This document shows, piece by piece, positions 7,782-60,070 of a DNA stretch of 64,000 nt (position 1 is its first letter; every line of letters begins with the position of its first letter). The notes below the pieces were generated by a model. That model was not told where the DNA came from. It made no database searches and saw only the letters and a list, made by a program, of their open reading frames with translations. The position numbers and the translations under genes were made by a program. The stretch is taken from the IMG/VR virus record IMGVR_UViG_3300023174_000033, positions 1-64,000 of that record, one strand, 5' to 3'.

Positions 7782-8279
7782 TTATAGTTTTTCTATTATA
7801 TTAACTAACTTAGCATAATCCTGACTCATCAACCATTTGAGTCCAAAGTGTAAAGGTTGTGGTAAATTATCCAATTCAGTCCAAGTGAATTCCTTAGTTT
7901 CCCAGTTTAATTTAGGTGTAAATTCTTCATCTACTATCGCTAAGAAGTTATAGTATCTAAACGAATCTTTTTGAAATATAGATAGTGGTACCATTTCTAC
8001 CTTACCACTATATCCAGCTTCCTCTGTTAATTCTCTTTTGGCTGAAATTTGTGGATCTTCATCACTATCAATCGCACCCCCCCAAACACCCCAAGTGTTC
8101 GGCTCTAATACATATGATGATCGTAATGGTAAAAGAAATCTTTTTGTTACCCTACATAGGATTATACAACCAGCGCCTTTTTTACCCCAAAATCCAGTAT
8201 CAGATAAAGCCTTACGGTGGTCTTCATCACTTTCCTTCAAAAATTTTTCAAATGATTCAAATTTGAATAAATGTTTCAT
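7782..8279 (-). CDS. NUDIX hydrolase with N-terminal MKHLFKFESF tag
   Basis: Nudix box GGAIDSDEDPQISAKRELTEEAG. Confidence 0.9.
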   Translation of the reverse strand: MKHLFKFESFEKFLKESDEDHRKALSDTGFWGKKGAGCIILCRVTKRFLLPLRSSYVLEPNTWGVWGGAIDSDEDPQISAKRELTEEAGYSGKVEMVPLSIFQKDSFRYYNFLAIVDEEFTPKLNWETKEFTWTELDNLPQPLHFGLKWLMSQDYAKLVNIIEKL

Positions 8280-8944
8280 ATTATATTATTTTCTAAACAC
8301 CATTCATCCAAGACTTTTAAAGCCTCCTCCCTTGGTAAATCTCTTACCACTCTACCATTCTCCTTATAGAACTGTGCCCTCATTTGATTATCTATCCCAC
8401 GCTCAGTGAAATCTTCATCCTTTAGGACTGGTTCAGACTTATATGATCTAGGAATTCTAGGAACTTTAGTAAATAATCCCTCACTAGCTTTATCTTTTAA
8501 TAATTGCTCCAAACCTTTAAATGGGTTTTTATCACTTTCCTCACATATAAAATGTCCCATAGCTTTTGTATAATCAGTAGCCCTTGTATTGGGTGCAAAT
8601 ATAGAAACCACAAAACCAATACCACCTTGATCGAATGGTTTGATTAATATAATGTGATCAGTCTCCTCACATCGACAAATCAAAACCTTTAGAACATCTT
8701 TATCACTATATTCATATTGACGATCAAATTCAGCACTAAATGAAACATCACCTATAATAGATTTACACAACTCTTCTATCTTATTAAAAAATCCGTTTGA
8801 TTTCTTATCATCATCCCAAACGAGATACTTATCCCCCATTAACCAACTCTCCCTCCAAGTATTATATTGTTCCGCACTTATCTCTTCATAATAAGTTGAA
8901 AAGTAATCAGTATCAAAATCTTCAAATAATTTTAAGTGTTTCAT
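8276..8944 (-). CDS. Hypothetical protein, MKHLKLFE family
   Basis: N-terminal tag; C-terminal ~50 aa shared with 17280-17969. Confidence 0.7.
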   Translation of the reverse strand: MKHLKLFEDFDTDYFSTYYEEISAEQYNTWRESWLMGDKYLVWDDDKKSNGFFNKIEELCKSIIGDVSFSAEFDRQYEYSDKDVLKVLICRCEETDHIILIKPFDQGGIGFVVSIFAPNTRATDYTKAMGHFICEESDKNPFKGLEQLLKDKASEGLFTKVPRIPRSYKSEPVLKDEDFTERGIDNQMRAQFYKENGRVVRDLPREEALKVLDEWCLENNII

Positions 8945-8996
8945 ATTTTATATATTTATTTTTGGATTACAATTATATTATTGATATTTTTGTCTT

Positions 8997-9221
8997 ATGA
9001 CATACCAAGAAGCTTACGACCTAGCACTTAAATCAAAATGGATTGCAACACCCTGCTTTGTAGGGGAATCCTGTTGGTGTAATATAATCACACCAGAAGT
9101 CCCAATCTTTTATGGCGAAGAAGATAACGAAGAAGTCCAAATAGTTTCATCAGGCGCCATTAATAAACAAATAGCAGAGCATATAGTAAAAGTCCATAAC
9201 CAATCCCTTGAATCAAAATGA
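8997..9221 (+). CDS. Hypothetical protein (CFxGExCWC motif)
   Basis: ORF after TATTTTTG box at 8985-8992. Confidence 0.7.
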   Translation: MTYQEAYDLALKSKWIATPCFVGESCWCNIITPEVPIFYGEEDNEEVQIVSSGAINKQIAEHIVKVHNQSLESK

Positions 9222-9457
9222 TGAATGAATATTATAAACCCCTAATAGTTTTCCTCATAGGTGGTATCATAGGAATTTCTATTCTCATTTTAAAAACACC
9301 CAGTAAAAAATACCCAGTGACAGTTCAATGTTATTGGGAAACAAAAGGTTATCAATCATATCCCACTTTTGAGTGTGATTCTATTAAAGGTGATACTTGT
9401 TATAAAGATGGTAATGTGATTATAACAAAGAATATTATTAACGTTAGTTTTAATTAA
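9218..9457 (+). CDS. Hypothetical membrane-anchored protein
   Basis: N-terminal hydrophobic helix. Confidence 0.6.
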   Translation: MMNEYYKPLIVFLIGGIIGISILILKTPSKKYPVTVQCYWETKGYQSYPTFECDSIKGDTCYKDGNVIITKNIINVSFN

Positions 9458-9494
9458 ATTTGGTTTACAATTATTTTATCCTTACCTTTGTCTT

Positions 9495-9662
9495 ATGAAT
9501 AACACAAAAGTTGAAAGAGCAATCTACCTACAAAAAAAGGCGAACGACCAAATAGATACTTATGGTGAAGCATCCCATGATGTTGTAGATGAACTAATGG
9601 AAATTGTAGATTCCTTAAATGAAGGGGAACAATCACTTATGTTAGAACTTTATTACAAATAA
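9495..9662 (+). CDS. 55-aa hypothetical protein; its TAA stop forms the first TAAC core of the array
   Basis: MNNTKVERAIYLQKKANDQIDTYG…LYYK*, after TACCTTTG at 9483-9490; below the ORF-track cutoff. Confidence 0.7.
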   Translation: MNNTKVERAIYLQKKANDQIDTYGEASHDVVDELMEIVDSLNEGEQSLMLELYYK

Positions 9663-16573: not shown

Positions 16574-17278
16574 TTAAAATAGTTTTTCCTTGTAAGACTT
16601 ATGACATTGTAATTCTAACCCATTAGAGATACGTCTTACAGTTGCAATGTGCTTACCCCCATCAAAAAAATGATAAAACATTAAACCAATATCTCTAATA
16701 CAAGGATACAATCTGAATAACTCTAAAAACTTCTCATAATCTATTTCTTTAGACTCAGAATCCAATTCCCTTAAAGGTGATTTAAGTAAACTCAACATCT
16801 CCTCATTATCATTGTAAGGAGTTGTCTTTTCAGCCCACTCTTCAAACCCATCCCATCCATCTATAATACAATATAAAGTAACCATTGCAATAGATTCACT
16901 TTCAACCCTTGTTGGAAATACTACAGGAACATTTACCTGTATAACAAAATAATCATCATTATAAAAATTAATACGAAAATCAGGCTCTATTCCAACTTCA
17001 GTCTTATAATATAATGTAAGTACATTTGGCACTAGTTTTGAAGAAACACCATTAAACTCAATACCAGTAACTTCTGGTTTTAAGTAACCATTTAAAATCT
17101 TTAATATCCTTTGCTTATCACCTTCAGTTATTTTGTGTCTACCTTTTATTTCTTGTAAATCATCCATCATATAATCATACTCATCCTCATCTAAATCCAT
17201 ATAGGTTTTATTCTGCCTATTGAATATATCCCATAGTTCAGATTCGTTTAATTGATTAAATGATTTTAAGTGTTTCAT
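16574..17278 (-). CDS. Hypothetical protein, MKHLK family
   Basis: MKHLKSFNQLNE tag; DDYF…DGWDG motif resembling the 39.4-44 kb family. Confidence 0.7.
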   Translation of the reverse strand: MKHLKSFNQLNESELWDIFNRQNKTYMDLDEDEYDYMMDDLQEIKGRHKITEGDKQRILKILNGYLKPEVTGIEFNGVSSKLVPNVLTLYYKTEVGIEPDFRINFYNDDYFVIQVNVPVVFPTRVESESIAMVTLYCIIDGWDGFEEWAEKTTPYNDNEEMLSLLKSPLRELDSESKEIDYEKFLELFRLYPCIRDIGLMFYHFFDGGKHIATVRRISNGLELQCHKSYKEKLF

Positions 17279-17279: not shown

Positions 17280-17969
17280 TTATTTATTATTCATATCCCA
17301 TTTATCCAAAACCTTTAAAGCTTCTTCTCTGGGTAAATCCCCTACCTCCTTACCATGTTCCTTGTAAAACTTAGCCTTCATTTGATTGTCCATTCCACGC
17401 TCGATAAAATGTTCATCCTTTAAGATTGGTTCAGACTTATAAGCTTTTGGTTCCTTTTTAATCTTCTTATGTAAACAAGGCGATTCAGTCCAAACGTGTA
17501 ATGTAACACCTTCTTCCTTAGACATCTGAATCAATTCTTCATAAGACAAGGATCCAACCATACCACTATCAATTAACTGCTGTTGATACTCAACTATTGG
17601 TAGATAATCCCAATTCTTAAAGAAAAGTTGCCCAAGTCCACCACTGCCTATTTGTTTTGTAAACCCAAATCTAGCACCTTCTTGTGGTATTATCTCAAAT
17701 GCATTTCCAAACTTATCATAATTATTATCAGCCGGTCTGAAAAACATATGTACAGATTTAGTAGGGTCTTGTATTCCAAACTTAGTTGACCAGTTAGTCA
17801 TGAATTTTCTATAATTTTCATCATACCACATATCCCCTAAATGAACCTTTCTTTGACTAGGGTCATCTATGTATTCATCCTTATCTGCCCTTGAACCTCT
17901 TATCAAGGTTTTGTTGAATACATCTGGGAAATTAGATTGGAAGTTTTCGAATAGTTTAATATGTTTCAT
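17280..17969 (-). CDS. Hypothetical protein, MKHIKLFE family
   Basis: N-terminal tag; C-terminal module shared with 8276-8944. Confidence 0.7.
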   Translation of the reverse strand: MKHIKLFENFQSNFPDVFNKTLIRGSRADKDEYIDDPSQRKVHLGDMWYDENYRKFMTNWSTKFGIQDPTKSVHMFFRPADNNYDKFGNAFEIIPQEGARFGFTKQIGSGGLGQLFFKNWDYLPIVEYQQQLIDSGMVGSLSYEELIQMSKEEGVTLHVWTESPCLHKKIKKEPKAYKSEPILKDEHFIERGMDNQMKAKFYKEHGKEVGDLPREEALKVLDKWDMNNK

Positions 17970-18633: not shown

Positions 18634-19236
18634 TTATTTTTTTCTGAAATCATCACTCCTTGAATAATAAGTTAATCCAGAGTTATCATGCCTAACATAA
18701 CCATAAAATGATAAGATTATACTAAATAAACCCCATACAACAAAACCCAATATCATGCCCAAAAAAGCTGTAACCTTAAAATCAAGAACCATAGTTGTTG
18801 AGAATAAACTTGTTAATAAATTTATTATTACCGCATTTGGAATACCACCAGTAAATAAGTTTATTTTACCATACTGCTTCAAACTATACATAATTTTCAC
18901 AGCTAAACTCTCACCATCCTTTAATTCATCTATATAGTATAATTTTTCATTTTTCATTTCTATACCTAAAATGCTAGACATCTTCATAAAGTTCTCCTTG
19001 GTTGGCTTTACTTCTGTTGTACCAAAATTCTCTTTTAGAAAATCTCTTATATTCTGAACCTCTTCTTCTGGTAACTCTAACTTACTTCCAAACTTAGATA
19101 CCATACTACTAATCATAGATTTACTTGATGAAAGTAAATCGCTTAATACTTCACCAGAATGTTTTACTACATCGGTTGGTAAAAATCCCATTTCAACCTC
19201 CTCGTTGAATTTTTTATAATTTGATAAGTGTTTCAT
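18634..19236 (-). CDS. Membrane protein, MKHL family; paralog of 32775-33410
   Basis: Likely start MKHLSNYKKFNEEVEMG; two C-terminal hydrophobic helices. Confidence 0.65.
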   Translation of the reverse strand: MKHLSNYKKFNEEVEMGFLPTDVVKHSGEVLSDLLSSSKSMISSMVSKFGSKLELPEEEVQNIRDFLKENFGTTEVKPTKENFMKMSSILGIEMKNEKLYYIDELKDGESLAVKIMYSLKQYGKINLFTGGIPNAVIINLLTSLFSTTMVLDFKVTAFLGMILGFVVWGLFSIILSFYGYVRHDNSGLTYYSRSDDFRKK

Positions 19237-20665: not shown

Positions 20666-20691
20666 AAAACCCATCCTCAAGATGGGTTTTT
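20666..20691. terminator. Bidirectional intrinsic terminator
   Basis: AAAACCCATC-CTCAA-GATGGGTTTTT between convergent genes. Confidence 0.75.
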
Positions 20692-20988
20692 GAATAAATG
20701 AGGATTGAGTGGTTTACAACAATTCTTTATCAAACCTACAAGTCTTTCAACTACCTCAAAATCTAAATCAGTAACCTTACCCTCTGAATGTGTTGAGATT
20801 TTTATCCTCACTGTTTTACCTTCTAAACAAAAATAATCTGGATGATGATCTAATTCATTGAATACATCACAAGACTTTTTAATGAATTCCATAGCCTCAT
20901 AAATATCCTTGAAGTTGAAACTTTCCTCTAAAACAAGTCCATCTTTATCAAAAAATTCTTTCAAATATTTCATAATCCTACCAATCAT
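20677..20988 (-). CDS. Pterin-4a-carbinolamine dehydratase-like protein
   Basis: F.FKD..EA..F, DHHPD, STHSEG.VTDLD motifs. Confidence 0.85.
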   Translation of the reverse strand: MIGRIMKYLKEFFDKDGLVLEESFNFKDIYEAMEFIKKSCDVFNELDHHPDYFCLEGKTVRIKISTHSEGKVTDLDFEVVERLVGLIKNCCKPLNPHLFKNPS

Positions 20989-21085: not shown

Positions 21086-22237
21086 ATGATATATTTAAAA
21101 ACATTCAAAAATATACAAAAGCTTAATGAAGCCGAAACACCTACAACAGAAAAAGAGATTGGTGTAAAAACAAAACCGGAAAAGGGACCAGATGTTCCAG
21201 TGACTAGACAAGATATTGAAAAAGTTGGTAAAATGTTAGATGCGGATTATGATTCCTTCATAAAAGCATTAACTGGAGTATCAGGAATTCCATCATCTGA
21301 AACAGTAGCTGAAATTGACCCAAAAGTAAAAGCTGTTTTGAATATGGGACGTAGAGATAAAAATCTACAAGATGAAATTATTAAGTATAGCACACCACAA
21401 TTGAATGTTAAAGATCTTAAACCAACTCAATCACAAATCGGACTAGCAGATTCAATTGGGTTTATAGCTTTCAAAGATCCAAATGGTGCTAAAAGTTCTC
21501 TTTCAGGCGCATCCAACTTCGGTGGTGGTGCAATTTTAACTGCCGATAATAAATATATCCTAGACGGACATCATAGATGGAGTCAAGTATTTATGATAAA
21601 TCCTGATGCTACAATTCCTTGTGTGAATATTAATCTTAATGTTAGTAGTGGTGAAGAAGCACTGAAAGTTATTCAATTGGCAATCGCAGCTACTTATGGA
21701 GATCCAGATAAACCTGGCTCCTTATTTATGAAACCAGCAAGTGCAGTCACTGATTTATTTGACGATAGTATTACTGGACAAAAAGGTGAAAAAATACCTG
21801 AACTACTCAAAAGAATATTTAAAGGAGATCCCAAAGTTGTAAAAATGCCAAAGGGTGGAAATTTAGACAATGTTTCAATTTTTATGGATATATTGAAAGA
21901 AGCTTGGGATACAGATGATGATGGTGTTGTTGAAAAGTTAGCCAAACACGCAACGATGATTAAATCCTATAGACCAGAAAATGCACCAGCAAGGGCTATT
22001 ATGCCACAACCATCTGATACCGCTGATAAGTTGGGTAAACCAACCGATGATGGTCCGGGTAAAATGCCAGCTGCTGTTATTAATAAATTAACATCTGGTT
22101 CTTTGAATTTTAAGCAACCACTTACACCAGAAGATAGTACAAGAACACGTCAACAACTTGGACTAAAACAAAAATATGGAACTAAAACAGATCAAAAAGT
22201 AGTTGATAATTTCAACACCTTTCTTAAAAGAAATTAA
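21086..22237 (+). CDS. ParB/Srx-like domain protein with N-terminal tag
   Basis: LKPTQSQI and YILDGHHRW motifs. Confidence 0.7.
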   Translation: MIYLKTFKNIQKLNEAETPTTEKEIGVKTKPEKGPDVPVTRQDIEKVGKMLDADYDSFIKALTGVSGIPSSETVAEIDPKVKAVLNMGRRDKNLQDEIIKYSTPQLNVKDLKPTQSQIGLADSIGFIAFKDPNGAKSSLSGASNFGGGAILTADNKYILDGHHRWSQVFMINPDATIPCVNINLNVSSGEEALKVIQLAIAATYGDPDKPGSLFMKPASAVTDLFDDSITGQKGEKIPELLKRIFKGDPKVVKMPKGGNLDNVSIFMDILKEAWDTDDDGVVEKLAKHATMIKSYRPENAPARAIMPQPSDTADKLGKPTDDGPGKMPAAVINKLTSGSLNFKQPLTPEDSTRTRQQLGLKQKYGTKTDQKVVDNFNTFLKRN

Positions 22238-22950: not shown

Positions 22951-23460
22951 TTATTTAAAATCATTTTTAGTAATATCCCCAATTGAACCAAATGAATCAG
23001 CTACACCAGGCATTTTCTTGTTCTCTACATTATTAGCGATTGTCATATGAAAAAACCTTTCTGGTTCTGGATTATCAATTCCTAAACGAGAATAAATCTC
23101 ATCTACATACTTTTTCAATTCTTCTTGATTTAATACCGCAACAACAAAACTCTTTTTTGAAGCTTCTGGCCTTTCAGCAATCGTCACATCACCCAATTCA
23201 ATCCTAGGTGGTTGAATATCCTTTGGTAAATCCGACTTTAAAACCCCCTTTATATCTTTACAAGACTTGATACTAGTTAATGTAATGTGCAATTTATCTT
23301 CTGGTAAAGCAAATAAATCACTGATGTTAGCTTCCTCTAGTATCTTCAATGCAGCTTCTTTTATTGAATTATCAACTTTTAAAAGTAAAGCCGCTTCAAA
23401 TATCAAATCAGTACCCATGCCACTTGACTCAAATAATTTGAATGATTTTAAATGTCTCAT
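22951..23460 (-). CDS. 2H phosphoesterase (Acb1/RNA ligase-like) with N-terminal tag
   Basis: Two HxT motifs: LHITL and FHMTI. Confidence 0.75.
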   Translation of the reverse strand: MRHLKSFKLFESSGMGTDLIFEAALLLKVDNSIKEAALKILEEANISDLFALPEDKLHITLTSIKSCKDIKGVLKSDLPKDIQPPRIELGDVTIAERPEASKKSFVVAVLNQEELKKYVDEIYSRLGIDNPEPERFFHMTIANNVENKKMPGVADSFGSIGDITKNDFK

Positions 23461-23500: not shown

Positions 23501-24061
23501 ATGAAAAAGTTAATGAAATTTGAATTATATAAATCCACTTATATGTCTGCTGCTGATAATTTAGAACAAGGACATAAAAAGAGGTCAGAGGAATTAAAAA
23601 AACATGCTGCTGAAAAAGGCATAAGTGCTTTCGCTGGCAAAGAAGGATTTGATAGAATTTACGGACATCCGTTTGTTTTTCAAAATCAGTTTCCAAATAG
23701 AGAAAAATTCCTTGGTAAGTTTTTTATAACAGATTTTAAAGATCAATTATATGGTCGTTATAATCAATCATATCATGGTATAGGTGTTGTAATGAAATCT
23801 GATTATGGTAATACAATTCAGATTGATGTTGTTACTTCCCCAGATAAAGAATGGGTTAAAATGGATTTACAATATCAAATCGGAAATAGTGATAGGACAA
23901 CAGAAGAAAAGAATTTCCTTTTTGAAAATAGAAAAGATGCTTTGGAGTTCAGAAAATCACTTTTAGAATATGTGGAAGATGAATTATATGACTATGATGA
24001 AGCTTCTGAATATTTCAATTTAAAAACTATACCAATAAATAAACTCTATAAAACTGTATAG
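23501..24061 (+). CDS. Hypothetical protein with MKKLMKFE tag
   Basis: ORF, divergent from a shared TATATA element. Confidence 0.7.
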   Translation: MKKLMKFELYKSTYMSAADNLEQGHKKRSEELKKHAAEKGISAFAGKEGFDRIYGHPFVFQNQFPNREKFLGKFFITDFKDQLYGRYNQSYHGIGVVMKSDYGNTIQIDVVTSPDKEWVKMDLQYQIGNSDRTTEEKNFLFENRKDALEFRKSLLEYVEDELYDYDEASEYFNLKTIPINKLYKTV

Positions 24062-38506: not shown

Positions 38507-38893
38507 TTAAATCTTTCCTTTAACCATATCCAAATCAACTGGCTTATCCATATTATCCATTGCCATAATGATATTACCATCTTCATGTAGAACAGCAATT
38601 AATTTATCCTCCTCTTCGATAAGGGTCATTTCTCTTTCCCCTTTAACATAAGCATCCCAATACTTCTTAGTCTGCTCATCGTTTCTAACGGATAAACTCC
38701 ATAATACAGGCTGTCCATGTTCCTTAGACCACTGATGAACTGCACCAACAAAAGCTGCAAAGTCATCGGGATAATATGTATCTGGTCCTAATTCAGGATA
38801 AACAGTTTCTTTATCATACATACCACCATCTGGCATTCTTACCATATCCTCGGGCATATCACTTTCAAATACTTTGAATGTTTTAAATCTCAT
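38507..38893 (-). CDS. Hypothetical protein with MRFKTFKVFES tag
   Basis: ORF. Confidence 0.65.
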   Translation of the reverse strand: MRFKTFKVFESDMPEDMVRMPDGGMYDKETVYPELGPDTYYPDDFAAFVGAVHQWSKEHGQPVLWSLSVRNDEQTKKYWDAYVKGEREMTLIEEEDKLIAVLHEDGNIIMAMDNMDKPVDLDMVKGKI

Positions 38894-39447: not shown

Positions 39448-39819
39448 ATGAAATACCTAAAAATATTTGAAAGTTTTACAAGTGATAAATTTGAAGATCA
39501 AATTGAAGATTTATTTATTGGAATAACTGATGAATTAGGATCAGATATAGGTATTCATGTGGTTATGGATCTATTTGATGTTGGTCCAAGAACTGAACGA
39601 CTACAAGTAAAGATATTCTTTCCACATGGATATGAACCATCACCTATGGATGTTTATTATAAAATAAGAAATGAACTGGTACCAATCCATAACAAAATAA
39701 TGAAAGATTATGGATTAAAGTTCAGTGGTTGTTCACAATTATATAGACGTGGTGACCCTAAATACTATGGGGTGATGAATTTAATTTATTATAAGAATGA
39801 AGTATCTGAAGAAGTTTGA
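39448..39819 (+). CDS. MKYLKIFESF-family protein
   Basis: N-terminal tag; IEDLF motif shared with the next ORF. Confidence 0.7.
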   Translation: MKYLKIFESFTSDKFEDQIEDLFIGITDELGSDIGIHVVMDLFDVGPRTERLQVKIFFPHGYEPSPMDVYYKIRNELVPIHNKIMKDYGLKFSGCSQLYRRGDPKYYGVMNLIYYKNEVSEEV

Positions 39820-40654
39820 GGGGTTTGACTATCATGGTCCACAATATGCAAAGACTATTTGTGATGGTTGGGGTATTGATTTAGAAGACATAGAAGACCT
39901 TTTTCTTGAATTTGCAGATGAAGGTAAAGTTCTTATTCATCCTATGATAGTAAATAAGGAGTTACGGGTTACTATCCATTCTATTTGGAAAGATTTAAAT
40001 GATTCTGATTGGTTATATAATCCTCTTTGGGATGGGAGGTTTGGGTCTATTAAAAGAAGGTTGAGACAAATGGGTCTTGATATGAACTTAGAGACTAAAA
40101 ACTTACCACAAAGATTTGTTAGTGTTAGGATTTTTCCACAAACTGAGAGAAAAAGAACCTACACTAAAACTGATATAGTTACAGAATCATTTGGTAGATT
40201 TCAATTGGATGAAATCAGCAAACAAGAATATTATTCGATTTTGGATAATAATCCTTTGGTTTATATGCCAGAGAGTAAGGTTTTAGAATTTAAAAGTAAG
40301 CTATCAAAAGAATATAAATTACTTTATGCTCGTGGTGATAAAAAAGATACTGTGGAATACTTCCGAGCTGAATATGAAACAGAAATAGATTATCATTTTA
40401 CCTGCAAAAATTTTAGTATAAAAAAGAAATCCCAAGGTCAAGGTGTGGATGAATCTTGTTATATAATGTTCTACAATTACGAAGAGTTTACATCACACGC
40501 AGCTCCCAAATCTCATATTGAAACACTACCCGACCAACAACGAATAAGTTTTCAAAAGAAATTTTACTTTAGATTTGAAGAATCTGACTTCAATCAAATG
40601 TGTAAAAACCCACAAATCCTTTTGGATTACTTAAATAATTTAGACTTATCATGA
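39797..40654 (+). CDS. MKYLKKFE-family two-module protein
   Basis: Internal ESFGRFQLDEI module shared with 41568-43229. Confidence 0.7.
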   Translation: MKYLKKFEGFDYHGPQYAKTICDGWGIDLEDIEDLFLEFADEGKVLIHPMIVNKELRVTIHSIWKDLNDSDWLYNPLWDGRFGSIKRRLRQMGLDMNLETKNLPQRFVSVRIFPQTERKRTYTKTDIVTESFGRFQLDEISKQEYYSILDNNPLVYMPESKVLEFKSKLSKEYKLLYARGDKKDTVEYFRAEYETEIDYHFTCKNFSIKKKSQGQGVDESCYIMFYNYEEFTSHAAPKSHIETLPDQQRISFQKKFYFRFEESDFNQMCKNPQILLDYLNNLDLS

Positions 40655-41097
40655 AACATTTAAAACTATTTGAATCATTTGGTGGTGAACCTTACTTTAG
40701 AATTGAGGTTGCTGAATTCAATCAAGATGATAAGTGTGAATTATTTAATACTAATGAAGTTTCAAAGATTATAGAATTACTAAAAGGATTTGGATATGAA
40801 GTAGAACTAGAAAATATCTTCTATAATCCAACAGAAAACCCAAATAAATCATTTAGGATTAGAGGTAAAAAAACATCACCTTTAGCTAAAGGTGATGGAT
40901 ATTATAAAGATGAAGTTATTCTGTATAAAGTGGAAGATGAATACTTTGATGTGTTTGTAAAGAAGATTACCGGAATACCAGAACAATCAAGATTAGAAAG
41001 ATTGAGAGGTCATAAAGCTATACCACTAACAGATATGGATTATTTAAGGGCAGACCAGTTAGATGGGTTAGAAGAATTATTTAAGGATAGATTATAA
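40651..41097 (+). CDS. MKHLKLFESF-family protein
   Basis: EDEYF…ADQLDGL module. Confidence 0.7.
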   Translation: MKHLKLFESFGGEPYFRIEVAEFNQDDKCELFNTNEVSKIIELLKGFGYEVELENIFYNPTENPNKSFRIRGKKTSPLAKGDGYYKDEVILYKVEDEYFDVFVKKITGIPEQSRLERLRGHKAIPLTDMDYLRADQLDGLEELFKDRL

Positions 41098-41100: not shown

Positions 41101-41553
41101 TTACTTTTTTACATTATCCTTCTCAACCTTTTCAACTATTTCATTTGAAAACTTCTCAAAGTTCTTAATAATACCCATTAAATCTTGAAGTTCCATTCTG
41201 ATGTGAATACTAGTTAATTGCATATCAGTTCCTATAACATTGTAATCAACTAAACACAATACATAAGGCGTGTCATCTTGGACCCCTCTAATAAGAAATG
41301 TTGCAATAAAAATAACCCTTCCAATTTTAGTTTGTTTATTCCAATTCAAAATTATTTGAGTAGGATGCTCACCACCTATTTGATTGGTTCTCATTCCATT
41401 ACGATTTGCATTCAATGCAAAAGCTTGATAAATCTTTCCACTAAAACCAACTCTTTGAGTATTCTTATAAGACTGATCAAACTTCCATTTTGGAACAAAC
41501 TCAAGTTCAAAATCCCCAGTTTCAAATTCCTCAAATACTTTTAAGTATAACAT
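41101..41553 (-). CDS. MLYLKVFEEF-family protein
   Basis: N-terminal tag; GVQDDTPY motif resembles the GDEPF motif of neighbours. Confidence 0.65.
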   Translation of the reverse strand: MLYLKVFEEFETGDFELEFVPKWKFDQSYKNTQRVGFSGKIYQAFALNANRNGMRTNQIGGEHPTQIILNWNKQTKIGRVIFIATFLIRGVQDDTPYVLCLVDYNVIGTDMQLTSIHIRMELQDLMGIIKNFEKFSNEIVEKVEKDNVKK

Positions 41554-41567
41554 ATTAATATATATTA

Positions 41568-43229
41568 ATGATGAAATACCTTAAACTATTTGAATTATTT
41601 GGTGGATTTCAATTGGATGAAATCACAAGAAAACAATACATTGATATCCAGGTCAGTAGAGAGGATGAGATTATTAATTATGGAAGTCTTCAGTTGATGG
41701 GGGAAAACTTGGATAAAAAGTATGAACTAAAACATACTGGTGTTTGGTTTAAGATTGAATGGGTAGATATACTAAACGGTAATGTTGAGATTCAAACAGA
41801 AATATTTGTGGATAAAGTTTCTCAATATGGAGATGAACCATTTTATACTTTAAAATATTACTATGATGTTTCTCAAGGTAGTAAATATAGTGATAGGTAC
41901 CATTTCTTTAGATTTGAGGAATCTGATTTTGACCAGATGTGTAAGAACCCACAAATACTAATTGATTATCTTAAAGATAATTATTTTGATGAGTCTATTA
42001 TTCAAAGGGATGGGGTAGTTGATGAGGCATTTGGTTTCTCTAGGGGGATTAATCCAGATATACTAACACGGGAACAATTTGAAAGTTTATCAAGACAATG
42101 TATTCATATGAGGTTTAGTAGTAAAACCACAGTAGGACTTACTATGAATATTAGAAAGACTGATATAAATATCAACTATGATTCAAAGGTAAAACAACAT
42201 ATAATGTTTTATTTTAATTATAGTTATTTGGATGCTAAAATGGTATTCAATACCAAGTTTTCTATTATGAAGATTGAAGGTGATGAGCCTTTTGTTTATT
42301 TTGATGCTCGATATGGTTATAGAAATATTGGAACGGATTATTGGGAATACCAAAAATATCCACATGATGAGAGCATCTATGGTAGAATGGAGGTAGAGGA
42401 GTTTGATATGATTATCAAAAATCCAAGACTATGGAAAGATTGGATGGTTGATAAAACTTTTGAACTAGACCAACAGACACATAAGATATTAAAAGAATCT
42501 TTATTTGATGTACCAGAACCAGAACTCATGGATGTAAATGAATGGGATGAAGAAGTAACTAATGCTAAAGAAGTTGATTTCAATCAAAAGGAAAAAGAAT
42601 TATTCATTTCTTTGAGTGATACCATCAGTGTAAAAAACAAAAGGTATATGCCAGAAATCGGTAAATCTAGTTTATTTTTTCAGATGATTAATGGGGATAT
42701 AAATCCTAAATTAAAAGAAACAACTCCTATAAGAAATATTTCAACTTACAAAAATGATGATGAATTTTATTATGTAAATATTTGGGGAAGAGATGCTGAT
42801 GATAAGGTATATCGTTGTGATGGTTATGAATGTTGGGAAAAGTTTTTAAAAGAAATATTCCAAGGATATAGAGATTTGATTAATAACCAAACTAAAACCA
42901 ATGAATCATTTGGTGGGTATTATTATAAGGAAATGGGAGGTTCTGATTATTTCAGGGCAACAAATCATAGATTCACTGATAGTGAGATAAAAGAGTTATC
43001 TAATATCGCAGAACAAAAAGGTGGTGAAGTTCAAAAGTATCCAGGTGATTTAATGGCTACTATTAAAATTCCAAGGGATAAAGGAACTGTAACGATGATA
43101 GAACATACTAGTGTAAAGAAAGTAGAGGATGAGTTTTATTATGTGGCATTTGATATAATGAATCAAAAGAAATATTATGAAGCAGATCAGTTTGATGGGT
43201 TAATAAAATTACTAGAAGATATACTATGA
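41568..43229 (+). CDS. Four-module MKYLKLFE-family protein
   Basis: Modules begin at ELFGG, EAFG, ESLFD and ESFGG; three have close paralogs in neighbouring genes. Confidence 0.75.
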   Translation: MMKYLKLFELFGGFQLDEITRKQYIDIQVSREDEIINYGSLQLMGENLDKKYELKHTGVWFKIEWVDILNGNVEIQTEIFVDKVSQYGDEPFYTLKYYYDVSQGSKYSDRYHFFRFEESDFDQMCKNPQILIDYLKDNYFDESIIQRDGVVDEAFGFSRGINPDILTREQFESLSRQCIHMRFSSKTTVGLTMNIRKTDININYDSKVKQHIMFYFNYSYLDAKMVFNTKFSIMKIEGDEPFVYFDARYGYRNIGTDYWEYQKYPHDESIYGRMEVEEFDMIIKNPRLWKDWMVDKTFELDQQTHKILKESLFDVPEPELMDVNEWDEEVTNAKEVDFNQKEKELFISLSDTISVKNKRYMPEIGKSSLFFQMINGDINPKLKETTPIRNISTYKNDDEFYYVNIWGRDADDKVYRCDGYECWEKFLKEIFQGYRDLINNQTKTNESFGGYYYKEMGGSDYFRATNHRFTDSEIKELSNIAEQKGGEVQKYPGDLMATIKIPRDKGTVTMIEHTSVKKVEDEFYYVAFDIMNQKKYYEADQFDGLIKLLEDIL

Positions 43230-43603
43230 AACATTTAAAACTGTTTGAATCATTTTTTGGTGAATATGAGAAGGTTGATGCTGAAACTTGGAATTCATTT
43301 GGAAAGATTACTCGTTTTGGAGATTCTAAAATTAATCAAATAGAAAAACTAATCCATACCAAAGGTTATGGACATATGTTTATTACAGATAAAATAGGAA
43401 CAATTGGGGTTAGTAAGGAATTAATCAATTTTGTTAAAAGGGATAATAAATTATTCACCAAAATCTTAGTAGTATCTCTAGAAGATGAATGGTTTAAAGT
43501 TAGAATAGAAACAAGTAAGAAAACTCAAGTAACATATGATAAACAATATTACATATGTGATCAGTTTGATGGGTTAATAAAATTTATAGAAGAAGTCTTA
43601 TGA
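43226..43603 (+). CDS. MKHLKLFESF-family protein
   Basis: EDEWF…CDQFDGLIK module. Confidence 0.7.
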   Translation: MKHLKLFESFFGEYEKVDAETWNSFGKITRFGDSKINQIEKLIHTKGYGHMFITDKIGTIGVSKELINFVKRDNKLFTKILVVSLEDEWFKVRIETSKKTQVTYDKQYYICDQFDGLIKFIEEVL

Positions 43604-44022
43604 AATACTTAAAACTATTTGAATCTATGTTTGATGAAGTGCCAGAACCAAGAAGTCTTCTTGATGAAAATGGAGATTATATCATAGGTTCATCAAGACT
43701 CCATCAAAATTTAGTTGAACCGTTCAATCAGCAAGAAAAGGTATTCATCAATGAACTTTTAGAAACCTTAAATGAAGATTATATTTCAACTAACTTTAGT
43801 GATCCAGCTCAATTCATATTAGCAATGGGTGAGATGGGTGAACCTACACACTTTTTAAAAGTTATAAAAATGGAGGATGATTATTATCAGGTTGAGTATG
43901 TGAACTATGTAGATTCAGATGATGAGTATATAGTTTCAGAATGTGATGGGTTTGAGTGTTTATCTAAACTTCTAATTGAACTCTTTGGGAAAATTAAAAC
44001 GGATTACGATGGTGGTGAATGA
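43600..44022 (+). CDS. MKYLKLFES-family protein
   Basis: FDEVPEP…FNQ.EK…CDGFEC module, as in module 3 of 41568-43229. Confidence 0.7.
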   Translation: MKYLKLFESMFDEVPEPRSLLDENGDYIIGSSRLHQNLVEPFNQQEKVFINELLETLNEDYISTNFSDPAQFILAMGEMGEPTHFLKVIKMEDDYYQVEYVNYVDSDDEYIVSECDGFECLSKLLIELFGKIKTDYDGGE

Positions 44023-47485: not shown

Positions 47486-47598
47486 AAAATTAGATATATA
47501 TGTTATGAATAGAATTAAACCATATCAACAATTTATCAGTATTCCATCTGATGAAGATGATTTTAATTCACCAGGATACGGTGATAGATGGTAAAAAG

Positions 47599-51041: not shown

Positions 51042-51413
51042 ATGAAATACATTAGAATATACGAAAAGTATTCGGACTGGGTAGATATTAAAAGGTCTGA
51101 ATCAGACAAAATAGTATCACTGCCTGGATACGATTTATATAGAAGTAACATATTAGGGTATTATGGTGTAATTGGTAGGAGGGAACAATTGTCTATGGAG
51201 AACTTGACCATACGAAAGGAAAGTGATGGAAGTTTCATATTAGATATAAGGAGGTCTCCTGGTTATTTCAAGGGTCTTATAGCAGCTGGTCAAAAGGGAT
51301 GGGAAGAGGATTGGTCAAGGAGGGAGTTTGATTTGAAATTTAATTTTGATGATATAAACGAGTTAATTAAGTTTTTAACTGAGTATGATGGGTGGTATGA
51401 TTTGAAGTATTGA
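51042..51413 (+). CDS. Hypothetical protein with MKYIRIYE tag
   Basis: ORF after AATATATA. Confidence 0.65.
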   Translation: MKYIRIYEKYSDWVDIKRSESDKIVSLPGYDLYRSNILGYYGVIGRREQLSMENLTIRKESDGSFILDIRRSPGYFKGLIAAGQKGWEEDWSRREFDLKFNFDDINELIKFLTEYDGWYDLKY

Positions 51414-51524
51414 TTTTAGAACATAGGGTATTTATCGGTTTCATATAAGATGTTCAATACGTGGGTCTTATAATCCAAAAAAATTTTTTTAAAAACTCGG
51501 AATTATTCATATCTTTGTATCCAT

Positions 51525-57761: not shown

Positions 57762-57817
57762 ATAAACGATATATATTCATTTAATTTTTCCCAAGTGGAT
57801 AACTTTTAAACAAAAAA

Positions 57818-58729
57818 TTGAATAATATTATGGATTTATCAAAATTTATAATAGGTGAAAATTTAAAAGACCTATCCACTATTAGTATCAATTTCACTAA
57901 TCATCAACAAAAAAGAAATTATAGTAGAAACAATATAGTTTTTTGTAAAACTGATTTAGTTTTAATGCTTTTCAATGAAGTAAGTAATCTTGACATCAAT
58001 ATCATATTAATAACCCATCAGTCTGATTATGAAGTAAATAATATGAATCCTTTGATTGATGGTTCTGGAAATTTATTAATTGATTGGACTAGGCCAGCAG
58101 AGGGAAATACACCAGCTTTATATAAAATTAAACCACCTCAAATAAAAAAATGGTTCGCTCAAAATGTCAATCATAAAAGTGACAATTTAATACCGTTACC
58201 AATTGGACTTGAAAATCATCATGGTCCATCAAGGGGTGGATCAATTGATCCAAATTACTTGGAAGGATTGGAGGATATAAATACTGATAATATTTGTAAA
58301 GAAGGAAAAGTAACTGATAAAATTTATTTGAATTTTGGTAAAACTCATAATAATAGAGAAAATGTTAGAAATTTTCTTATTGAATCTAAACTTTCCTTTA
58401 TTGAAAATGAAAAACTCTCTTATACAAATTACTTGAAAAAAATAAGTGATTTTTTATTCATAGCTTCCCCTAGGGGAAATGGTATTGATACCCATAGAAC
58501 TTGGGAAGCTCTTTATATGGGATCAATACCAATTGTAGAAAAACATCATATGTATGATACTTATAACCTTCCAATCTGGCAAATTGAATCTTGGGATGAA
58601 GTAACTAACGAATCAAAAAGAAATTATTGGATTGAAAGATATAAATCTGGCAATTTATTCAAAAATATTGACCAACTATTCATGGAATATTGGAAAAATA
58701 GAATTTTGGATGAATACAATAAACTTTGA
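57818..58729 (+). CDS. Exostosin-like (GT47) glycosyltransferase
   Basis: WFAQN, PLPIGL and SPRGNGIDTHRTWEALY.GSIPIV motifs. Confidence 0.75.
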   Translation: MNNIMDLSKFIIGENLKDLSTISINFTNHQQKRNYSRNNIVFCKTDLVLMLFNEVSNLDINIILITHQSDYEVNNMNPLIDGSGNLLIDWTRPAEGNTPALYKIKPPQIKKWFAQNVNHKSDNLIPLPIGLENHHGPSRGGSIDPNYLEGLEDINTDNICKEGKVTDKIYLNFGKTHNNRENVRNFLIESKLSFIENEKLSYTNYLKKISDFLFIASPRGNGIDTHRTWEALYMGSIPIVEKHHMYDTYNLPIWQIESWDEVTNESKRNYWIERYKSGNLFKNIDQLFMEYWKNRILDEYNKL

Positions 58730-58730
58730 A

Positions 58731-58874
58731 TTACTTACCTTGTCCTTTGTATTTCTTCTTATACATTTTGGATCCTTTAGCTGATGAATTCTTTTTAGCG
58801 TGTCTTTTCAGTCTCTTTTTGGATCTCTTTTTGAAAAGAATTGAGGTAGATGATTTTGTAGGTTTAGCTGCCAT
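58731..58874 (-). CDS. 47-aa highly basic peptide
   Basis: MAAKPTKSSTSILFKKRSKKRLKRHAKKNSSAKGSKMYKKKYKGQGK*, preceded by AATATATA; missed by the ORF track. Confidence 0.7.
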   Translation of the reverse strand: MAAKPTKSSTSILFKKRSKKRLKRHAKKNSSAKGSKMYKKKYKGQGK

Positions 58875-58900
58875 TTTTGAATTATATATTTAATTCAAAA

Positions 58901-60070
58901 TCAATTTTTTGATAGAAAATTATCAACCTCAATCCTTCTTATTTCCCTACCTAAATCACCTTTTTTAAAACCCTTTCTAATCAAATCTTGCACATTCGTC
59001 ACTGGCATCCAATTAGAAAACTTTACTATATTTTTACTTTTTAAAATATTTCCCCATTCTAAAATTGTAGAATTATCAATCTTTGATTGTAGTTTTTCTT
59101 TATAATAATCATAAACTAAATTTAAATCAAATTTTGATATTTTTAAGAGAAATACAACCTTTTTAGCAATTTCAATTTCAATCTTATATACTTGAACCAT
59201 TTTATTTTCAAGGTCAAATGGATTCTCAAATAAAAACAAATTTGATAGAATTAAAACAAAATTATCACTATTGATAAGTTTTGTATTTATTTTTGAATTT
59301 GGGAATAATTCTACCCACATATCATATTCTGTGATTAGACTTAAAAAGAAATTAAAATCTTCAGATTGTTTCCAAGCTTTAGTAAATTCACTCCAAATCC
59401 TTTCTTGGGATATTCTTTTCTCTTTATTTGTATCTAAATCAATTGTTGTTAATTTGTTTTTATTTTTGATTGCTTGTTTGGTAGACTCGTCTAATTCCGA
59501 TTTATATCTTGAAGCAAATCTAAAAGCTCTTAATATTCTCAAGGAATCTTCATCAAATCTCTCTGATGCGTTTCCAACCATCTTTATTATGTTTTTATTC
59601 AAATCTTCTTTACCTCCGGTTAAATCTACAATTTCTTTTGTATCTAAATCGTAGAATAAAGCATTGAATGTTATGTCTCTTCTTTTTACATCATCTTCAA
59701 TTGTCACTCCCAATTTAACTTGTGGGTTTCTACCCTTTGAAATATCTTGTCTGAATGTGGTTATTTCAATTCCATCTGGTTGATCATCGGTATATACAAC
59801 TATAGTTCCATAAGCTTTTCCTTGTATATTAGTATTGTATCTATCTTGTAAAAAACTTAATACTTCATCAGGCAGGGCGTTTGTGGTTAAATCAAAATCT
59901 TTTGGATCATCTCCTTTAAGGAAATCTCTAACAGCACCACCGACTATATAAAGTTTTTTACCTTGTTGATTGAATATTTTATGTATATCTTTTATAGATT
60001 TTGGTATAATTGACCATAGATCCATTTGACTTGATTCAACCAAGAAGTTTTTAAAATTTAAAATACGCAT
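58901..60070 (-). CDS. cca: CCA-adding tRNA nucleotidyltransferase (class II)
   Basis: VGGAVRD, DFDLTT, EITTFR, D..RRD.TFNA, RFDEDSLRILRAFRF and SQERI..E motifs. Confidence 0.9.
   Translation of the reverse strand: MRILNFKNFLVESSQMDLWSIIPKSIKDIHKIFNQQGKKLYIVGGAVRDFLKGDDPKDFDLTTNALPDEVLSFLQDRYNTNIQGKAYGTIVVYTDDQPDGIEITTFRQDISKGRNPQVKLGVTIEDDVKRRDITFNALFYDLDTKEIVDLTGGKEDLNKNIIKMVGNASERFDEDSLRILRAFRFASRYKSELDESTKQAIKNKNKLTTIDLDTNKEKRISQERIWSEFTKAWKQSEDFNFFLSLITEYDMWVELFPNSKINTKLINSDNFVLILSNLFLFENPFDLENKMVQVYKIEIEIAKKVVFLLKISKFDLNLVYDYYKEKLQSKIDNSTILEWGNILKSKNIVKFSNWMPVTNVQDLIRKGFKKGDLGREIRRIEVDNFLSKN

What the first reader, a model, noticed from the sequence alone, without database searches (positions are those of the whole stretch)
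7782..60070. About 25 unrelated proteins share an N-terminal MK(H/Y)LKxFExF tag: candidate capsid-targeting signal
Seen at the starts of ORFs 7782-, 8276-, 16574-, 17280-, 18634-, 20677-, 21086+, 22951-, 23501+, 29131+, 30741-, 32775-, 33458-, 38507-, 39448+, 39797+, 40651+, 41101-, 41568+, 43226+, 43600+, 51042+ and 58901-, plus looser variants and a 29-aa ORF at 47505-47594. The tag typically ends in E(S/E/D). It is attached to different folds: Nudix, 2H phosphoesterase, ART-like, PCD-like, ParB-like, CCA enzyme and membrane proteins. Known: T4 internal proteins use a ~10-aa N-terminal capsid-targeting sequence removed by the prohead protease after Glu. Inference: this is a modular address tag for packaging many effectors into the head for injection with the DNA.
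Basis: partly seen in the sequence, partly recalled or inferred. Interest (0 to 1): 0.75.

Follow-up and report, generated by a model that had tools for sequence, protein, structure and literature searches.

The report
Shared N-terminal leader on megaphage proteins
In this 465-kb phage of Bacteroidota, about 40 to 55 otherwise unrelated proteins start with the same 8-16-residue leader. It looks and is placed like the capsid-targeting sequence of phage T4, so the phage may pre-load a large set of enzymes into its head for injection, but no experiment shows this yet.

Summary
In the 464,605-bp virus genome that holds the window, 40-43 of 536 ORF N-termini carry M-K-[YH]-[LI]-K-x-[FY]-E-x-[FY]; none of 2,378 internal Met positions does. 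Synonymous codons vary, so the peptide is what is selected. After the tag is trimmed, the carriers fall into 33 BLAST-unrelated groups. The tag is a discrete add-on: paralogs and orthologs exist with and without it. It is disordered in an AlphaFold model. It is almost confined to viral contigs. Its consensus follows the phage lineage rather than the cargo.

The phage has a T4-type head module: Gp23 capsid protein, Gp20 portal, and a gp21-like protease fused to a repeat scaffold. The capsid propeptide and every scaffold repeat carry [LI]-x-E|N. Leaders end the same way. Their conserved hydrophobic positions 4 and 7 are the positions that direct targeting in the T4 capsid-targeting sequence (MKTYQEFIAE). 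A second, T4-like leader form ([FY]xx[FY][ILV]xE) is also enriched.

Tagged genes avoid host-type promoters and use the phage promoter that also drives head genes.

Best reading (about 0.55): a capsid-targeting, protease-removed leader used at proteome scale. It is a new variant of a known kind. There is no proteomic proof. ParB-like is unconfirmed and ART-like is weak.

The parts
7782..8279 (-). Nudix hydrolase with a 16-residue composite leader: type A tag followed by an L-K-E|S-D junction
   Evidence: Pfam NUDIX 5e-12. Tag score 18.0. Among 119 homologs the leader varies or is absent and ends in E in 86 of 117.
8276..8944 (-). Tagged protein (type A), no known domain; paralog of 17280
   Evidence: Score 28.9. 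Phage promoter box at -12. Paralogy.
16574..17278 (-). Tagged protein (type A variant), no known domain
   Evidence: Score 20.8. No Pfam or PHROG match.
17280..17969 (-). Tagged protein (type A), no known domain
   Evidence: Score 28.3. Tagged homologs on IMG/VR contigs L046 and L098.
18634..19236 (-). Tagged protein with a C-terminal hydrophobic segment; paralog of 32775
   Evidence: Score 16.9. Hydrophobic maximum 2.44 at residue 156.
20677..20973 (-). Pterin-4a-carbinolamine dehydratase-like protein; the tag starts at the second Met
   Evidence: Pfam Pterin_4a 3e-14. Score 18.5.
21086..22237 (+). Weaker tag variant, followed by L-N-E|A
   Evidence: Score 8.4. Box at -31.
22951..23460 (-). 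2H-phosphoesterase-like protein with tag
   Evidence: Score 21.4. Weak Pfam AKAP7 2'5' RNA ligase-like match, 8e-3. Two H-x-T motifs at residues 58 and 138.
23501..24061 (+). Loose tag variant (M-K-K-L-M-K-F-E-x-Y)
   Evidence: Score 0.9. Sequence.
29131..30369 (+). Protein with the T4-like 'type B' leader ([FY]xx[F][I]xE|S)
   Evidence: Regex match. No firm domain.
30741..31310 (-). Tagged protein, weakly ADP-ribosyltransferase-like
   Evidence: Score 28.8. Pfam ART-PolyVal 1.6e-3, below the cut-off. No PDB sequence match.
32775..33410 (-). Tagged protein; paralog of 18634
   Evidence: Score 21.4. Paralogy.
33458..34888 (-). 476-aa tagged protein (type A variant followed by V-N-E|E)
   Evidence: Score 15.0. 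No domain found.
38507..38893 (-). Loose variant resembling the tag form that dominates in the 735-kb relative
   Evidence: Sequence. Compare the LR756501 motifs.
39448..39819 (+). First gene of a tagged array (39.4-41.1 kb, + strand)
   Evidence: Score 28.4. Box at -19.
39797..40654 (+). Tagged array member with no promoter of its own
   Evidence: Score 24.8. Upstream sequence.
40651..41097 (+). Tagged array member with no promoter of its own
   Evidence: Score 32.5.
41101..41553 (-). Tagged protein, divergent from 41571
   Evidence: Score 12.2. Box at -13.
41571..43229 (+). 552-aa tagged protein, first gene of the array 41.6-44.0 kb
   Evidence: Score 29.5. Box at -14.
43226..43603 (+). Tagged array member
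   Evidence: Score 32.9, the best in the genome.
43600..44022 (+). Tagged array member
   Evidence: Score 30.1.
51042..51413 (+). Tagged protein (type A variant)
   Evidence: Score 17.6. Box at -16.
58901..60070 (-). CCA-adding/poly(A) polymerase family enzyme with a type B leader
   Evidence: Pfam PolyA_pol 4.7e-31, starting at residue 40. Regex match. Box at -12.
47505..47594 (+). 29-aa mini-ORF with a loosely tag-like start, followed by a hairpin and T-run
   Evidence: Translation and sequence.

Best explanation
The leader is a capsid-targeting sequence of the T4 kind, used on a much larger scale.

Inferred mechanism:
1. Tagged proteins are made from phage-specific promoters, the same promoter type that drives the head genes.
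2. The flexible N-terminal peptide docks them onto the assembling prohead core, which is built by the protease-scaffold fusion protein. Aliphatic residue 4 and aromatic residues 3, 7 and 10 form the contact face.
3. After the shell closes, the gp21-like prohead protease cuts after the conserved Glu: residue 8 in the main form, or the [LI]-x-E site in the T4-like form.
4. The trimmed enzymes and small proteins stay in the head and enter the host with the DNA.

Shown: the motif, its enrichment, selection on the peptide, its modularity, its disorder, its restriction to viruses, its lineage-specific consensus, the T4-type head module, the shared [LI]-x-E|N motif, and the promoter bias.

Inferred: binding to the core, cleavage, packaging and injection.
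For: 1. Enrichment and selection on the peptide. 41 of 536 N-termini carry the motif against 0 of 2,378 internal Met. Synonymous codons vary: Tyr TAC/TAT 14/10, His CAT/CAC 9/6, and six Leu codons. Amino-acid changes are conservative.

2. T4-type head module. The capsid protein matches Gp23 (6e-27) and the portal matches Gp20 (7e-59). A 690-aa protein matches head maturation protease (phrog_207, 1e-29; Peptidase_S77 weakly), and many of its homologs carry PF03420.

3. Shared cleavage-like motif. The capsid propeptide keeps [ILM]-x-E-N in all relatives. The scaffold part holds about ten 14-residue repeats, each with [LI]-A-E-N. Leaders end in F-E|[SN] or [LI]-x-E|[SNAG].

4. Match to T4. The T4 CTS is MKTYQEFIAE (PMC8442874). 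In T4, targeting depends on residues 4 and 7 and processing on residues 8 and 10 (PMC9026906). Here residue 4 is L/I in 32 of 32 seeds and residue 7 is F/Y in 32 of 32. One protein (genome 189430) even carries E-F-I-A-E.

5. Modularity.
- LRR-like paralogs in phage G001 differ by exactly a 12-residue insertion after Met.
- Nudix homologs have leaders of 8-10 or 16 residues, or none. P1 is E in 86 of 117 and P1' is N or S in 88 of 117.
- In the AlphaFold model of a 203-aa hydrolase-like family, residues 1-10 have pLDDT 44 and strand 1 starts at residue 12. Yet K5 and E8 are at least 90% conserved.

6. The consensus follows the phage lineage, not the cargo.
- The 735-kb relative lacks the pattern but has its own recurrent forms.
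- Its ortholog of the 203-aa family carries that form of the leader.
- Tag counts in relatives: LR745206 34, LR756504 22, Lak-A1 0, PTm1 0.

7. Restriction to viruses.
- 596 Gb of prokaryote genomes gave 41 loci, with 11 of 42 matches at clean starts.

8. Promoters, assigned at operon level.
- 49 of 54 tagged genes use only the phage box WATATATA, against 228 of 482 untagged genes (p = 2e-10).
- 3 of 54 use host-type TTTG/TAnnTTTG promoters, against 130 of 482 (p = 2e-4).
- The capsid and portal genes use the phage box.

9. Control. The same methods applied to T4 recover IPI, IPII and IPIII plus gp61.1, and little else.
Against: - There is no direct evidence. No cultured phage with the tag was found; the nearest cultured relative, PTm1, has none. 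No virion proteome exists.
- The complex prediction of protease-scaffold with a tagged protein returned 'no answer'. It counts neither way.
- The cargo is mostly acidic (median pI 5.4). It includes PCD, HAD-like, CCA and nicotinamidase-like enzymes, unlike T4's small basic internal proteins.
- In the main form, P3 is L or I in only about half of the tags.
- Conservation continues past the Glu to F10.
- The scale is large: about 10% of the ORFs here, and 44 tags in one 222-kb fragment.
- The phage promoter box also precedes the RNR and topoisomerase genes, so it is not strictly a late promoter.
- Tagged genes are over-represented among genes whose promoter box ends 4-5 nt before the ATG (16 of 24 against about 42 of 112). 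This leaves some room for a role in translation.
- Two tag-rich contigs (G001, G003) showed no T4-type portal or capsid match, though they are probably fragments.
Confidence: 0.55

Rival explanations
1. The leader is a docking motif for a different phage-specified machine. Candidates are the phage-encoded Hsp70/DnaJ chaperones, the ClpS-Clp degradation route (timed turnover), or an unknown intracellular compartment.
For: - The peptide is a conserved, disordered linear motif, which fits any receptor.
- The genome encodes Hsp70 (3e-252), DnaJ and ClpS (2.5e-16).
- A hydrophobic core flanked by Lys resembles Hsp70 client motifs (my own knowledge, not tested).
- The lineage-specific consensus fits any co-evolving receptor.
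Against: - This reading does not explain the near-invariant Glu (118 of 120).
- It does not explain why leaders end in the same [LI]-x-E|[NS] motif as the capsid propeptide and scaffold repeats.
- It does not explain the positional match to the T4 CTS.
- Hsp70 and ClpS motifs would also be expected on host proteins, yet the tag is almost absent from 596 Gb of cellular genomes.
- ClpS reads N-terminal F, L, W or Y. These leaders start with M-K.
Confidence: 0.2
2. The conserved start serves translation. It would be an optimal first ten codons, or an optimal nascent peptide, for phage transcripts that are leaderless or nearly so in a host that does not use Shine-Dalgarno sequences.
For: - Many tagged genes have the promoter box ending 4-5 nt before the ATG (16 of 24 with a box of their own).
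- Tag codons are somewhat richer in A/U than the genome average: AAA 88% against 75%, TTT 89% against 67%.
- Internal copies of the tag in other contigs always keep the Met.
Against: - 15 tagged genes lie inside operons and 8 have leaders of 25-45 nt.
- Tyr at position 3 prefers TAC (14 of 24 against 24% genome-wide), and Leu uses six codons.
- Substitutions are conservative at the protein level (Y/H/F, L/I, K/R, F/Y).
- About 90% of the genes, including highly expressed head genes, do without the tag.
- Host genomes do not use it.
- The consensus differs between related phages that should share the same kind of ribosome.
Confidence: 0.1
3. The shared start is a historical leftover. One ancestral 5' gene end would have spread by duplication and recombination onto new bodies, with no function of its own. 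Alternatively it is a membrane-binding amphipathic helix.
For: - Several tagged genes sit in tandem arrays of paralogs.
- In G001 many tags are identical at the DNA level, as expected after recent duplication.
- The residue spacing 3, 4, 7, 10 would give one hydrophobic face on a helix (inference from the consensus).
Against: - There are 33 unrelated cargo groups.
- The tag is kept under purifying selection across 120 orthologs at about 60% identity, with E8 in 118 of 120.
- DNA upstream and at synonymous sites is not conserved, so recombination has no cassette to act on.
- The conserved Glu, the acidic residues that follow and the net charge argue against binding to anionic membranes.
- Only 2 of 40 carriers have a hydrophobic segment.
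Confidence: 0.08

Closest known systems
Capsid-targeting sequence (CTS) of phage T4 internal proteins IPI, IPII, IPIII and Alt
   Same: - N-terminal and about 10 residues long, starting M-K.
- Hydrophobic or aromatic residues at positions 4 and 7.
- Ends in a Glu fitting the gp21-type [LI]-x-E rule.
- Shared by otherwise unrelated, non-essential-looking proteins, some in variable arrays.
- The phage has Gp23, Gp20 and gp21-type head genes.
- One weakly ART-like cargo recalls Alt.
   Different: - 40-55 carriers (7-10% of ORFs) against 3-4 in T4.
- The main form has Glu at position 8, not 10, and stays conserved to F10.
- The cargo is mostly acidic and includes recognisable enzymes: Nudix, 2H, PCD, CCA, HAD-like and nicotinamidase-like.
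- The protease is fused to a repeat scaffold.
- Packaging and cleavage are untested.
Propeptides of phiKZ / 201phi2-1 / SPN3US head and ejection proteins
   Same: A giant phage with a gp21-related protease that cuts after Glu. Many internal proteins (over 40 MDa in SPN3US) are packaged and ejected. Some paralogs share identical N-termini (PMC5694885).
   Different: Those propeptides are mostly 80-160 residues long and are not one short shared consensus. Their cleavage motif is S/A/G-x-E. The phage lineage and hosts are different.
Cargo-loading peptides of encapsulins
   Same: A short, disordered, modular peptide that addresses unrelated enzymes to the interior of an HK97-fold shell (my own knowledge).
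   Different: Encapsulin peptides are usually C-terminal, are not removed by a protease, have a different consensus, and have no link to DNA packaging or injection.

Membership tests
T4-type capsid-targeting sequence (CTS) | Short (10-20 residue) peptide at the extreme N-terminus, shared by proteins that are otherwise unrelated | tested here: met
   41 of 536 N-termini against 0 of 2,378 internal Met. 33 unrelated cargo groups.
T4-type capsid-targeting sequence (CTS) | The phage builds a T4-type prohead: Gp23-family shell, Gp20 portal, scaffolding core and gp21-family protease | tested here: met
   Pfam Gp23 6e-27 and Portal_T4 7e-59. PHROG head maturation protease 1e-29. PF03420 is recorded on homologs. 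The scaffold is a repeat domain fused to the protease.
T4-type capsid-targeting sequence (CTS) | Targeting determinants at residues 4 and 7 (hydrophobic or aromatic) | tested here: met
   L/I at position 4 and F/Y at position 7 in 32 of 32 seeds and in at least 118 of 120 orthologs. The T4 rule comes from PMC9026906. This is a match of sequence pattern only.
T4-type capsid-targeting sequence (CTS) | Ends in the prohead-protease site, [LI]-x-E followed by a small residue | tested here: inconclusive
   Type B leaders and the Nudix family fit exactly. In type A, E8 is conserved but P3 is L or I in only about half. The phage's own specificity is inferred from the capsid propeptide and scaffold repeats, not measured.
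T4-type capsid-targeting sequence (CTS) | The peptide is sufficient for incorporation into proheads and is removed during maturation; the cargo is ejected with the DNA | not testable with these tools
   No cultured carrier of the tag. The complex prediction gave no answer.
T4-type capsid-targeting sequence (CTS) | The cargo consists of small, basic, DNA-associated internal proteins | tested here: not met
   Median pI 5.4, with 27 of 40 below pI 6. Sizes range from 72 to 552 aa. Several are enzymes. This describes T4's own cargo rather than the signal, because foreign proteins can be packaged through the CTS (PMC9026906).
Sec / lipoprotein signal peptides | Positively charged n-region followed by a hydrophobic h-region of 10-15 residues and a cleavage site | tested here: not met
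   There is no hydrophobic stretch in the first 20 residues, and acidic residues follow the tag. True signal peptides in the same genome look different.
phiKZ-like long propeptides of ejection proteins | Propeptide of about 80-160 residues, cut at S/A/G-x-E | tested here: not met
   The leaders are 8-16 residues long, and the folded domain starts at residues 12-17.

The most novel reading that the evidence does not exclude
Huge Bacteroidota phages of the Mahaphage group use a short, fast-evolving, lineage-specific 'address code'. With it they load 50 or more different enzymes and small effectors, about a tenth of their proteome, into the capsid and deliver them with the DNA. If so, the leader alone would allow the ejected proteome of uncultured megaphages to be read from sequence. 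The tagged Nudix, 2H, ART-like, CCA and nicotinamidase-like proteins would be pre-made counter-defence or takeover enzymes.
Probability: 0.4. Interest if true: 0.85.

Novelty: new variant of a known kind. Interest (0 to 1): 0.7.

Why it matters
Huge phages are known almost only from metagenomes, and most of their genes have no assigned role. If this leader is a capsid address, it labels directly from sequence which proteins travel inside the virion. It would show that protein co-injection can involve dozens of enzymes rather than T4's three or four internal proteins. It would point to a candidate set of first-minute counter-defence enzymes. It would also offer a natural, short, modular tag for loading foreign proteins into large capsids.

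The work gives three sequence handles that make the idea testable by peptide mapping:
- two leader forms;
- the inferred protease motif [LI]-x-E|N;
- lineage-specific variants of the leader.

No paper in the searched library links megaphages with capsid targeting.

Tried and rejected
- The complex prediction of the protease-scaffold protein with a tagged protein gave 'no answer', so I do not use it.
- I looked for a cultured carrier so that virion proteomics could be consulted. PTm1, the nearest cultured relative, has no tag and no recurrent N-terminal motif. tblastn of the 17280 family against GenBank phages found nothing. The 203-aa family occurs only in uncultured huge phages.
- I tried to use the promoter box as a late-gene marker. 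The box (with A or T at its first position) also precedes the RNR and topoisomerase genes. I therefore claim only 'not host-type', not 'late'.
- A DNA-level cassette or recombination signal is rejected. Upstream regions differ and synonymous sites vary.
- The genome search with PF03420 found nothing in the genome, but scanning the protein directly gave the protease match.
- PDB sequence searches for the ART-like, 2H-like and 476-aa proteins gave nothing.
- PHROG scans of ten tagged proteins gave no functional name, and ParB-like was not found.
- Nudix and ART-like homologs were not detected in five relatives. The tool warns that an empty result shows nothing.
- T4-type portal and capsid searches in the tag-rich contigs G001-G003 were negative or weak. 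These contigs are probably fragments, so I draw no conclusion.

Full report
**What the window is.** The window is the first 64 kb of a single 464,605-bp virus contig: 32% G+C, CheckV completeness 98%, 7 tRNAs. Its capsid protein is closest to those of the largest known uncultured phages: 68% to LR745206 (635 kb), 50% to LR756504, 47% to the 735-kb LR756501, about 29% to the Lak phages and 28% to Tenacibaculum phage PTm1. These relatives form the 'Mahaphage' clade, predicted to infect Bacteroidetes (PMC7162821).

- I built a position matrix from 32 seed N-termini and scored all 536 crude ORFs of the genome. 41 N-termini score above 8 bits and 43 above 5 bits. None of 2,378 internal Met positions exceeds 1 bit.
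- The consensus is M-K-[YH]-[LI]-K-x-[FY]-E-x-[FY]. Positions 4 and 7 are invariant in class.
- 18 of the 40 strong tags lie in the window. Further arrays lie near 412 kb and 435 kb, and three carriers flank the head genes.
- With the first 14 residues removed, the 43 carriers form 33 BLAST-unrelated groups. 'Unrelated proteins' is therefore essentially right.
- Domain claims, confirmed: Nudix, PCD and CCA/PolyA_pol.
- Domain claims, partly confirmed: 2H is supported by two H-x-T motifs.
- Domain claims, weak or missing: ART-like is below threshold, and ParB-like was not found.
- Only two paralogs have a hydrophobic segment.

**The peptide is selected, not the DNA.** Upstream sequences differ. 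Fifteen carriers sit inside operons with no promoter of their own. Synonymous sites vary: Tyr TAC/TAT 14/10, His CAT/CAC 9/6, six Leu codons. Replacements are conservative at the protein level (Y/H/F, L/I, K/R, F/Y).

**The tag is a separable, disordered module.**
- A 203-aa family next to the head genes has 882 metagenomic homologs. The 120 listed homologs that I inspected all keep the tag, with K5 in 114 of 120 and E8 in 118 of 120.
- In an AlphaFold model of this family, residues 1-10 have pLDDT 44. A confident Rossmann-like domain, weakly nicotinamidase/isochorismatase-like, starts with a strand at residue 12.
- In the IMG/VR phage G001, members of one LRR-like paralog family differ by exactly a 12-residue insertion after the initiator Met.
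- In the Nudix family of ORF 7782, 119 homologs share the core, which starts [SN]-D-x-E-H. Their leaders have 8-10 residues (61 proteins) or 16 residues (11), and 2 proteins have no leader.
- In that family the last leader residue is Glu in 86 of 117. The residue two before it is L or I in 64. The first core residue is N or S in 88. The module boundary is therefore [LI]-x-E|[NS].

**The phage has the matching machinery.**
- The genome encodes a Gp23-family capsid protein, a Gp20 portal and a T4-type large terminase.
- It also encodes a 690-aa protein whose first roughly 340 residues match head maturation protease (phrog_207, 1e-29; weak Peptidase_S77). Many of its 3,581 homologs carry PF03420.
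- The rest of that protein contains about ten tandem 14-residue repeats, each with [LI]-A-E-N.
- The capsid propeptide keeps [ILM]-x-E-N in all relatives, including PTm1, at the place where T4 gp23 is cut (the T4 site is from my own knowledge).
- The inferred specificity, [LI]-x-E|N, is the T4 gp21 rule. It is also how the leaders end.

**Comparison with T4.**
- The T4 CTS is MKTYQEFIAE (PMC8442874). Truncation and suppressor work placed targeting at residues 4 and 7 and processing at residues 8 and 10 (PMC9026906).
- In the tag here, positions 1, 2 and 7 are identical to T4, and position 4 is again hydrophobic.
- A second form, [FY]-x-x-[FY]-[ILV]-x-E, reproduces the T4 pattern fully. Its counts at N-termini against internal Met are: this genome 15/536 against 3/2,278; the first 400 kb of LR756501 30/550 against 11/2,119; T4 4/271 against 1/962; PTm1 3/315 against 2/1,066, which is not enriched.
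- This second form covers the CCA enzyme and ORF 29131.
- As a control, my de novo N-terminus clustering applied to T4 recovers IPI, IPII, IPIII and gp61.1. T4 thus has 3-4 carriers. This phage has 40-55.

**The consensus follows the phage, not the cargo.**
- Counts of the DNA pattern for M-K-[YH]-x-K-x-F: LR745206 34, LR756504 22, LR756501 1, LR756500 0, Lak-A1 0, PTm1 0. Reversed-pattern controls give 0-1.
- Other IMG/VR contigs: G001 28 and G002 44.
- LR756501 instead has its own recurrent starts: M-I-K-K-[FY]-K-[LI]-F-E and the T4-like form.
- Its ortholog of the 203-aa family carries the T4-like form on a 22-residue extension.
- Such homogenisation within a genome is what a common receptor predicts.

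**The tag is specific to viruses.**
105 of 133 matches sit at clean ORF starts.
- The same pattern hit only 41 loci in 596 Gb of prokaryote genomes, with 11 of 42 matches at clean starts. Several of those have the phage promoter box upstream and are probably mis-binned phage contigs.
- This argues against a general host translation or chaperone signal.

**Promoters.**
- Two upstream elements are sharply localised. One is a host-type Bacteroidetes pattern, TTTG...TAnnTTTG. The other is a phage box, WATATATA, with 271 copies, 204 of them within 70 nt upstream of ORFs.
- Assigned at operon level, 49 of 54 tagged genes use only the phage box, against 228 of 482 untagged genes (p = 2e-10). 3 of 54 use a host-type promoter, against 130 of 482 (p = 2e-4).
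- The capsid and portal genes use the phage box, but so do the RNR and topoisomerase genes.
- I therefore conclude only that tagged genes are not expressed from host-type promoters, which are presumably the earliest. That fits proteins that must be made in one cycle and carried into the next.

**What weakens the reading.**
- Nothing shows packaging or cleavage.
- The complex prediction gave no answer.
- The cargo is mostly acidic and partly housekeeping-like.
- In the main form, P3 is L or I in only about half, and conservation runs on to F10.
- The scale is very large.
- Tagged genes are over-represented among near-leaderless genes.
- Alternative receptors exist in the genome: Hsp70, DnaJ and ClpS.

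**Verdict.** The feature is real and strongly non-random. Its best explanation is a T4-like capsid-targeting and processing leader used at proteome scale in huge Bacteroidota phages (confidence about 0.55). The rivals are another docking function (0.2), translation optimisation (0.1), and a functionless leftover or membrane helix (0.08). I class it as a new variant of a known kind. I found no paper linking megaphages with capsid targeting.

Noticed in passing
window 47770-47797, 45285-45301, 51508-51524 and many more; genome-wide: Host-type Bacteroidetes promoters (TTTG about 19 nt upstream of TAnnTTTG) end only 4-5 nt before the ATG of about 36 genes. These mRNAs would be leaderless or nearly so.
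   Followed up: partly
window 8945-8960 (upstream of 8276-8944, - strand), 31311-31326, 41554-41567; genome-wide: A phage-specific box, (T)T-W-ATATATA, has 271 copies, 204 of them within 70 nt upstream of ORFs. It falls into two spacing classes: ending 4-8 nt before the ATG, or about 15-28 nt before it. It resembles a single-element promoter such as T4's late TATAAATA.
   Followed up: partly
L010:7868-9937 (- strand; genome 247865-249937): The prohead protease is fused to a scaffold made of about ten tandem 14-residue repeats, each containing [LI]-A-E-N. The repeat number varies among the 3,581 homologs (lengths 636-807 aa among the 120 listed).
   Followed up: partly
L011:1505-1783 (+), L001:13950-15845 (+), L017:3037-4068 (-): The phage encodes a ClpS adaptor (next to the terminase gene), a full Hsp70 and a DnaJ.
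   Followed up: yes
window 45302-46096 (+) and 46112-46184 (+): A class-I aminoacyl-tRNA-synthetase-like gene (GluRS/GluQRS-like N-terminus), under a host-type promoter, sits directly upstream of a tRNA-Trp gene.
   Followed up: no
window 26753-28537 (-), 61999-64000 (-), continuing in L001:1999-9194: Four paralogous proteins of 594-827 aa share an N-terminus (M-R-x-D-x-I-[DN]-L). Three of them are in tandem, which suggests fibre or receptor-binding proteins.
   Followed up: no
L011:9815-18325 (genome 269815-278325): Two adjacent ORFs of 1,404 and 1,380 aa have identical first 25 residues and near-identical upstream regions. This is a recent tandem duplication of a large, probably structural gene.
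   Followed up: no
L034:7199-9388 (-), L024:2210-3304 (-), L073:10020-10496 (-): In other viral contigs some ORFs carry the tag twice: once at the N-terminus and once internally, always with its Met and sometimes after a Lys-rich linker. These could be fused neighbouring genes, nested starts or polyproteins.
   Followed up: partly
L185-L193 (IMG/VR contig G001; for example genome 5017-6587 against 58357-60736): A large LRR-like paralog family has tagged and untagged members in the same 182-kb, 25% G+C phage contig.
   Followed up: yes
tag codon 3 of the 40 carriers: Tyr at tag position 3 uses TAC in 14 of 24 cases, although TAC makes up only 24% of Tyr codons genome-wide. I have no explanation.
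   Followed up: no
window 18019-18591 (-), 36625-37737 (-), 49045-50301 (+): Untagged neighbours of the tagged genes include a 2OG-Fe(II) oxygenase, an N6/N4 DNA methylase and a GHKL-type ATPase (HATPase_c_3).
   Followed up: yes
L247:67-231 (- strand; T4 NC_000866 18966-19130): T4 gp61.1, a 54-aa hypothetical protein, starts with a CTS-like peptide (M-K-T-F-K-E-F-I-K-E). It clusters with IPI, IPII and IPIII in my control run.
   Followed up: no
window 47596-47632: A G+C-rich hairpin followed by a T-run lies directly after the 29-aa mini-ORF. The mini-ORF is therefore probably a real, separately terminated small gene.
   Followed up: no
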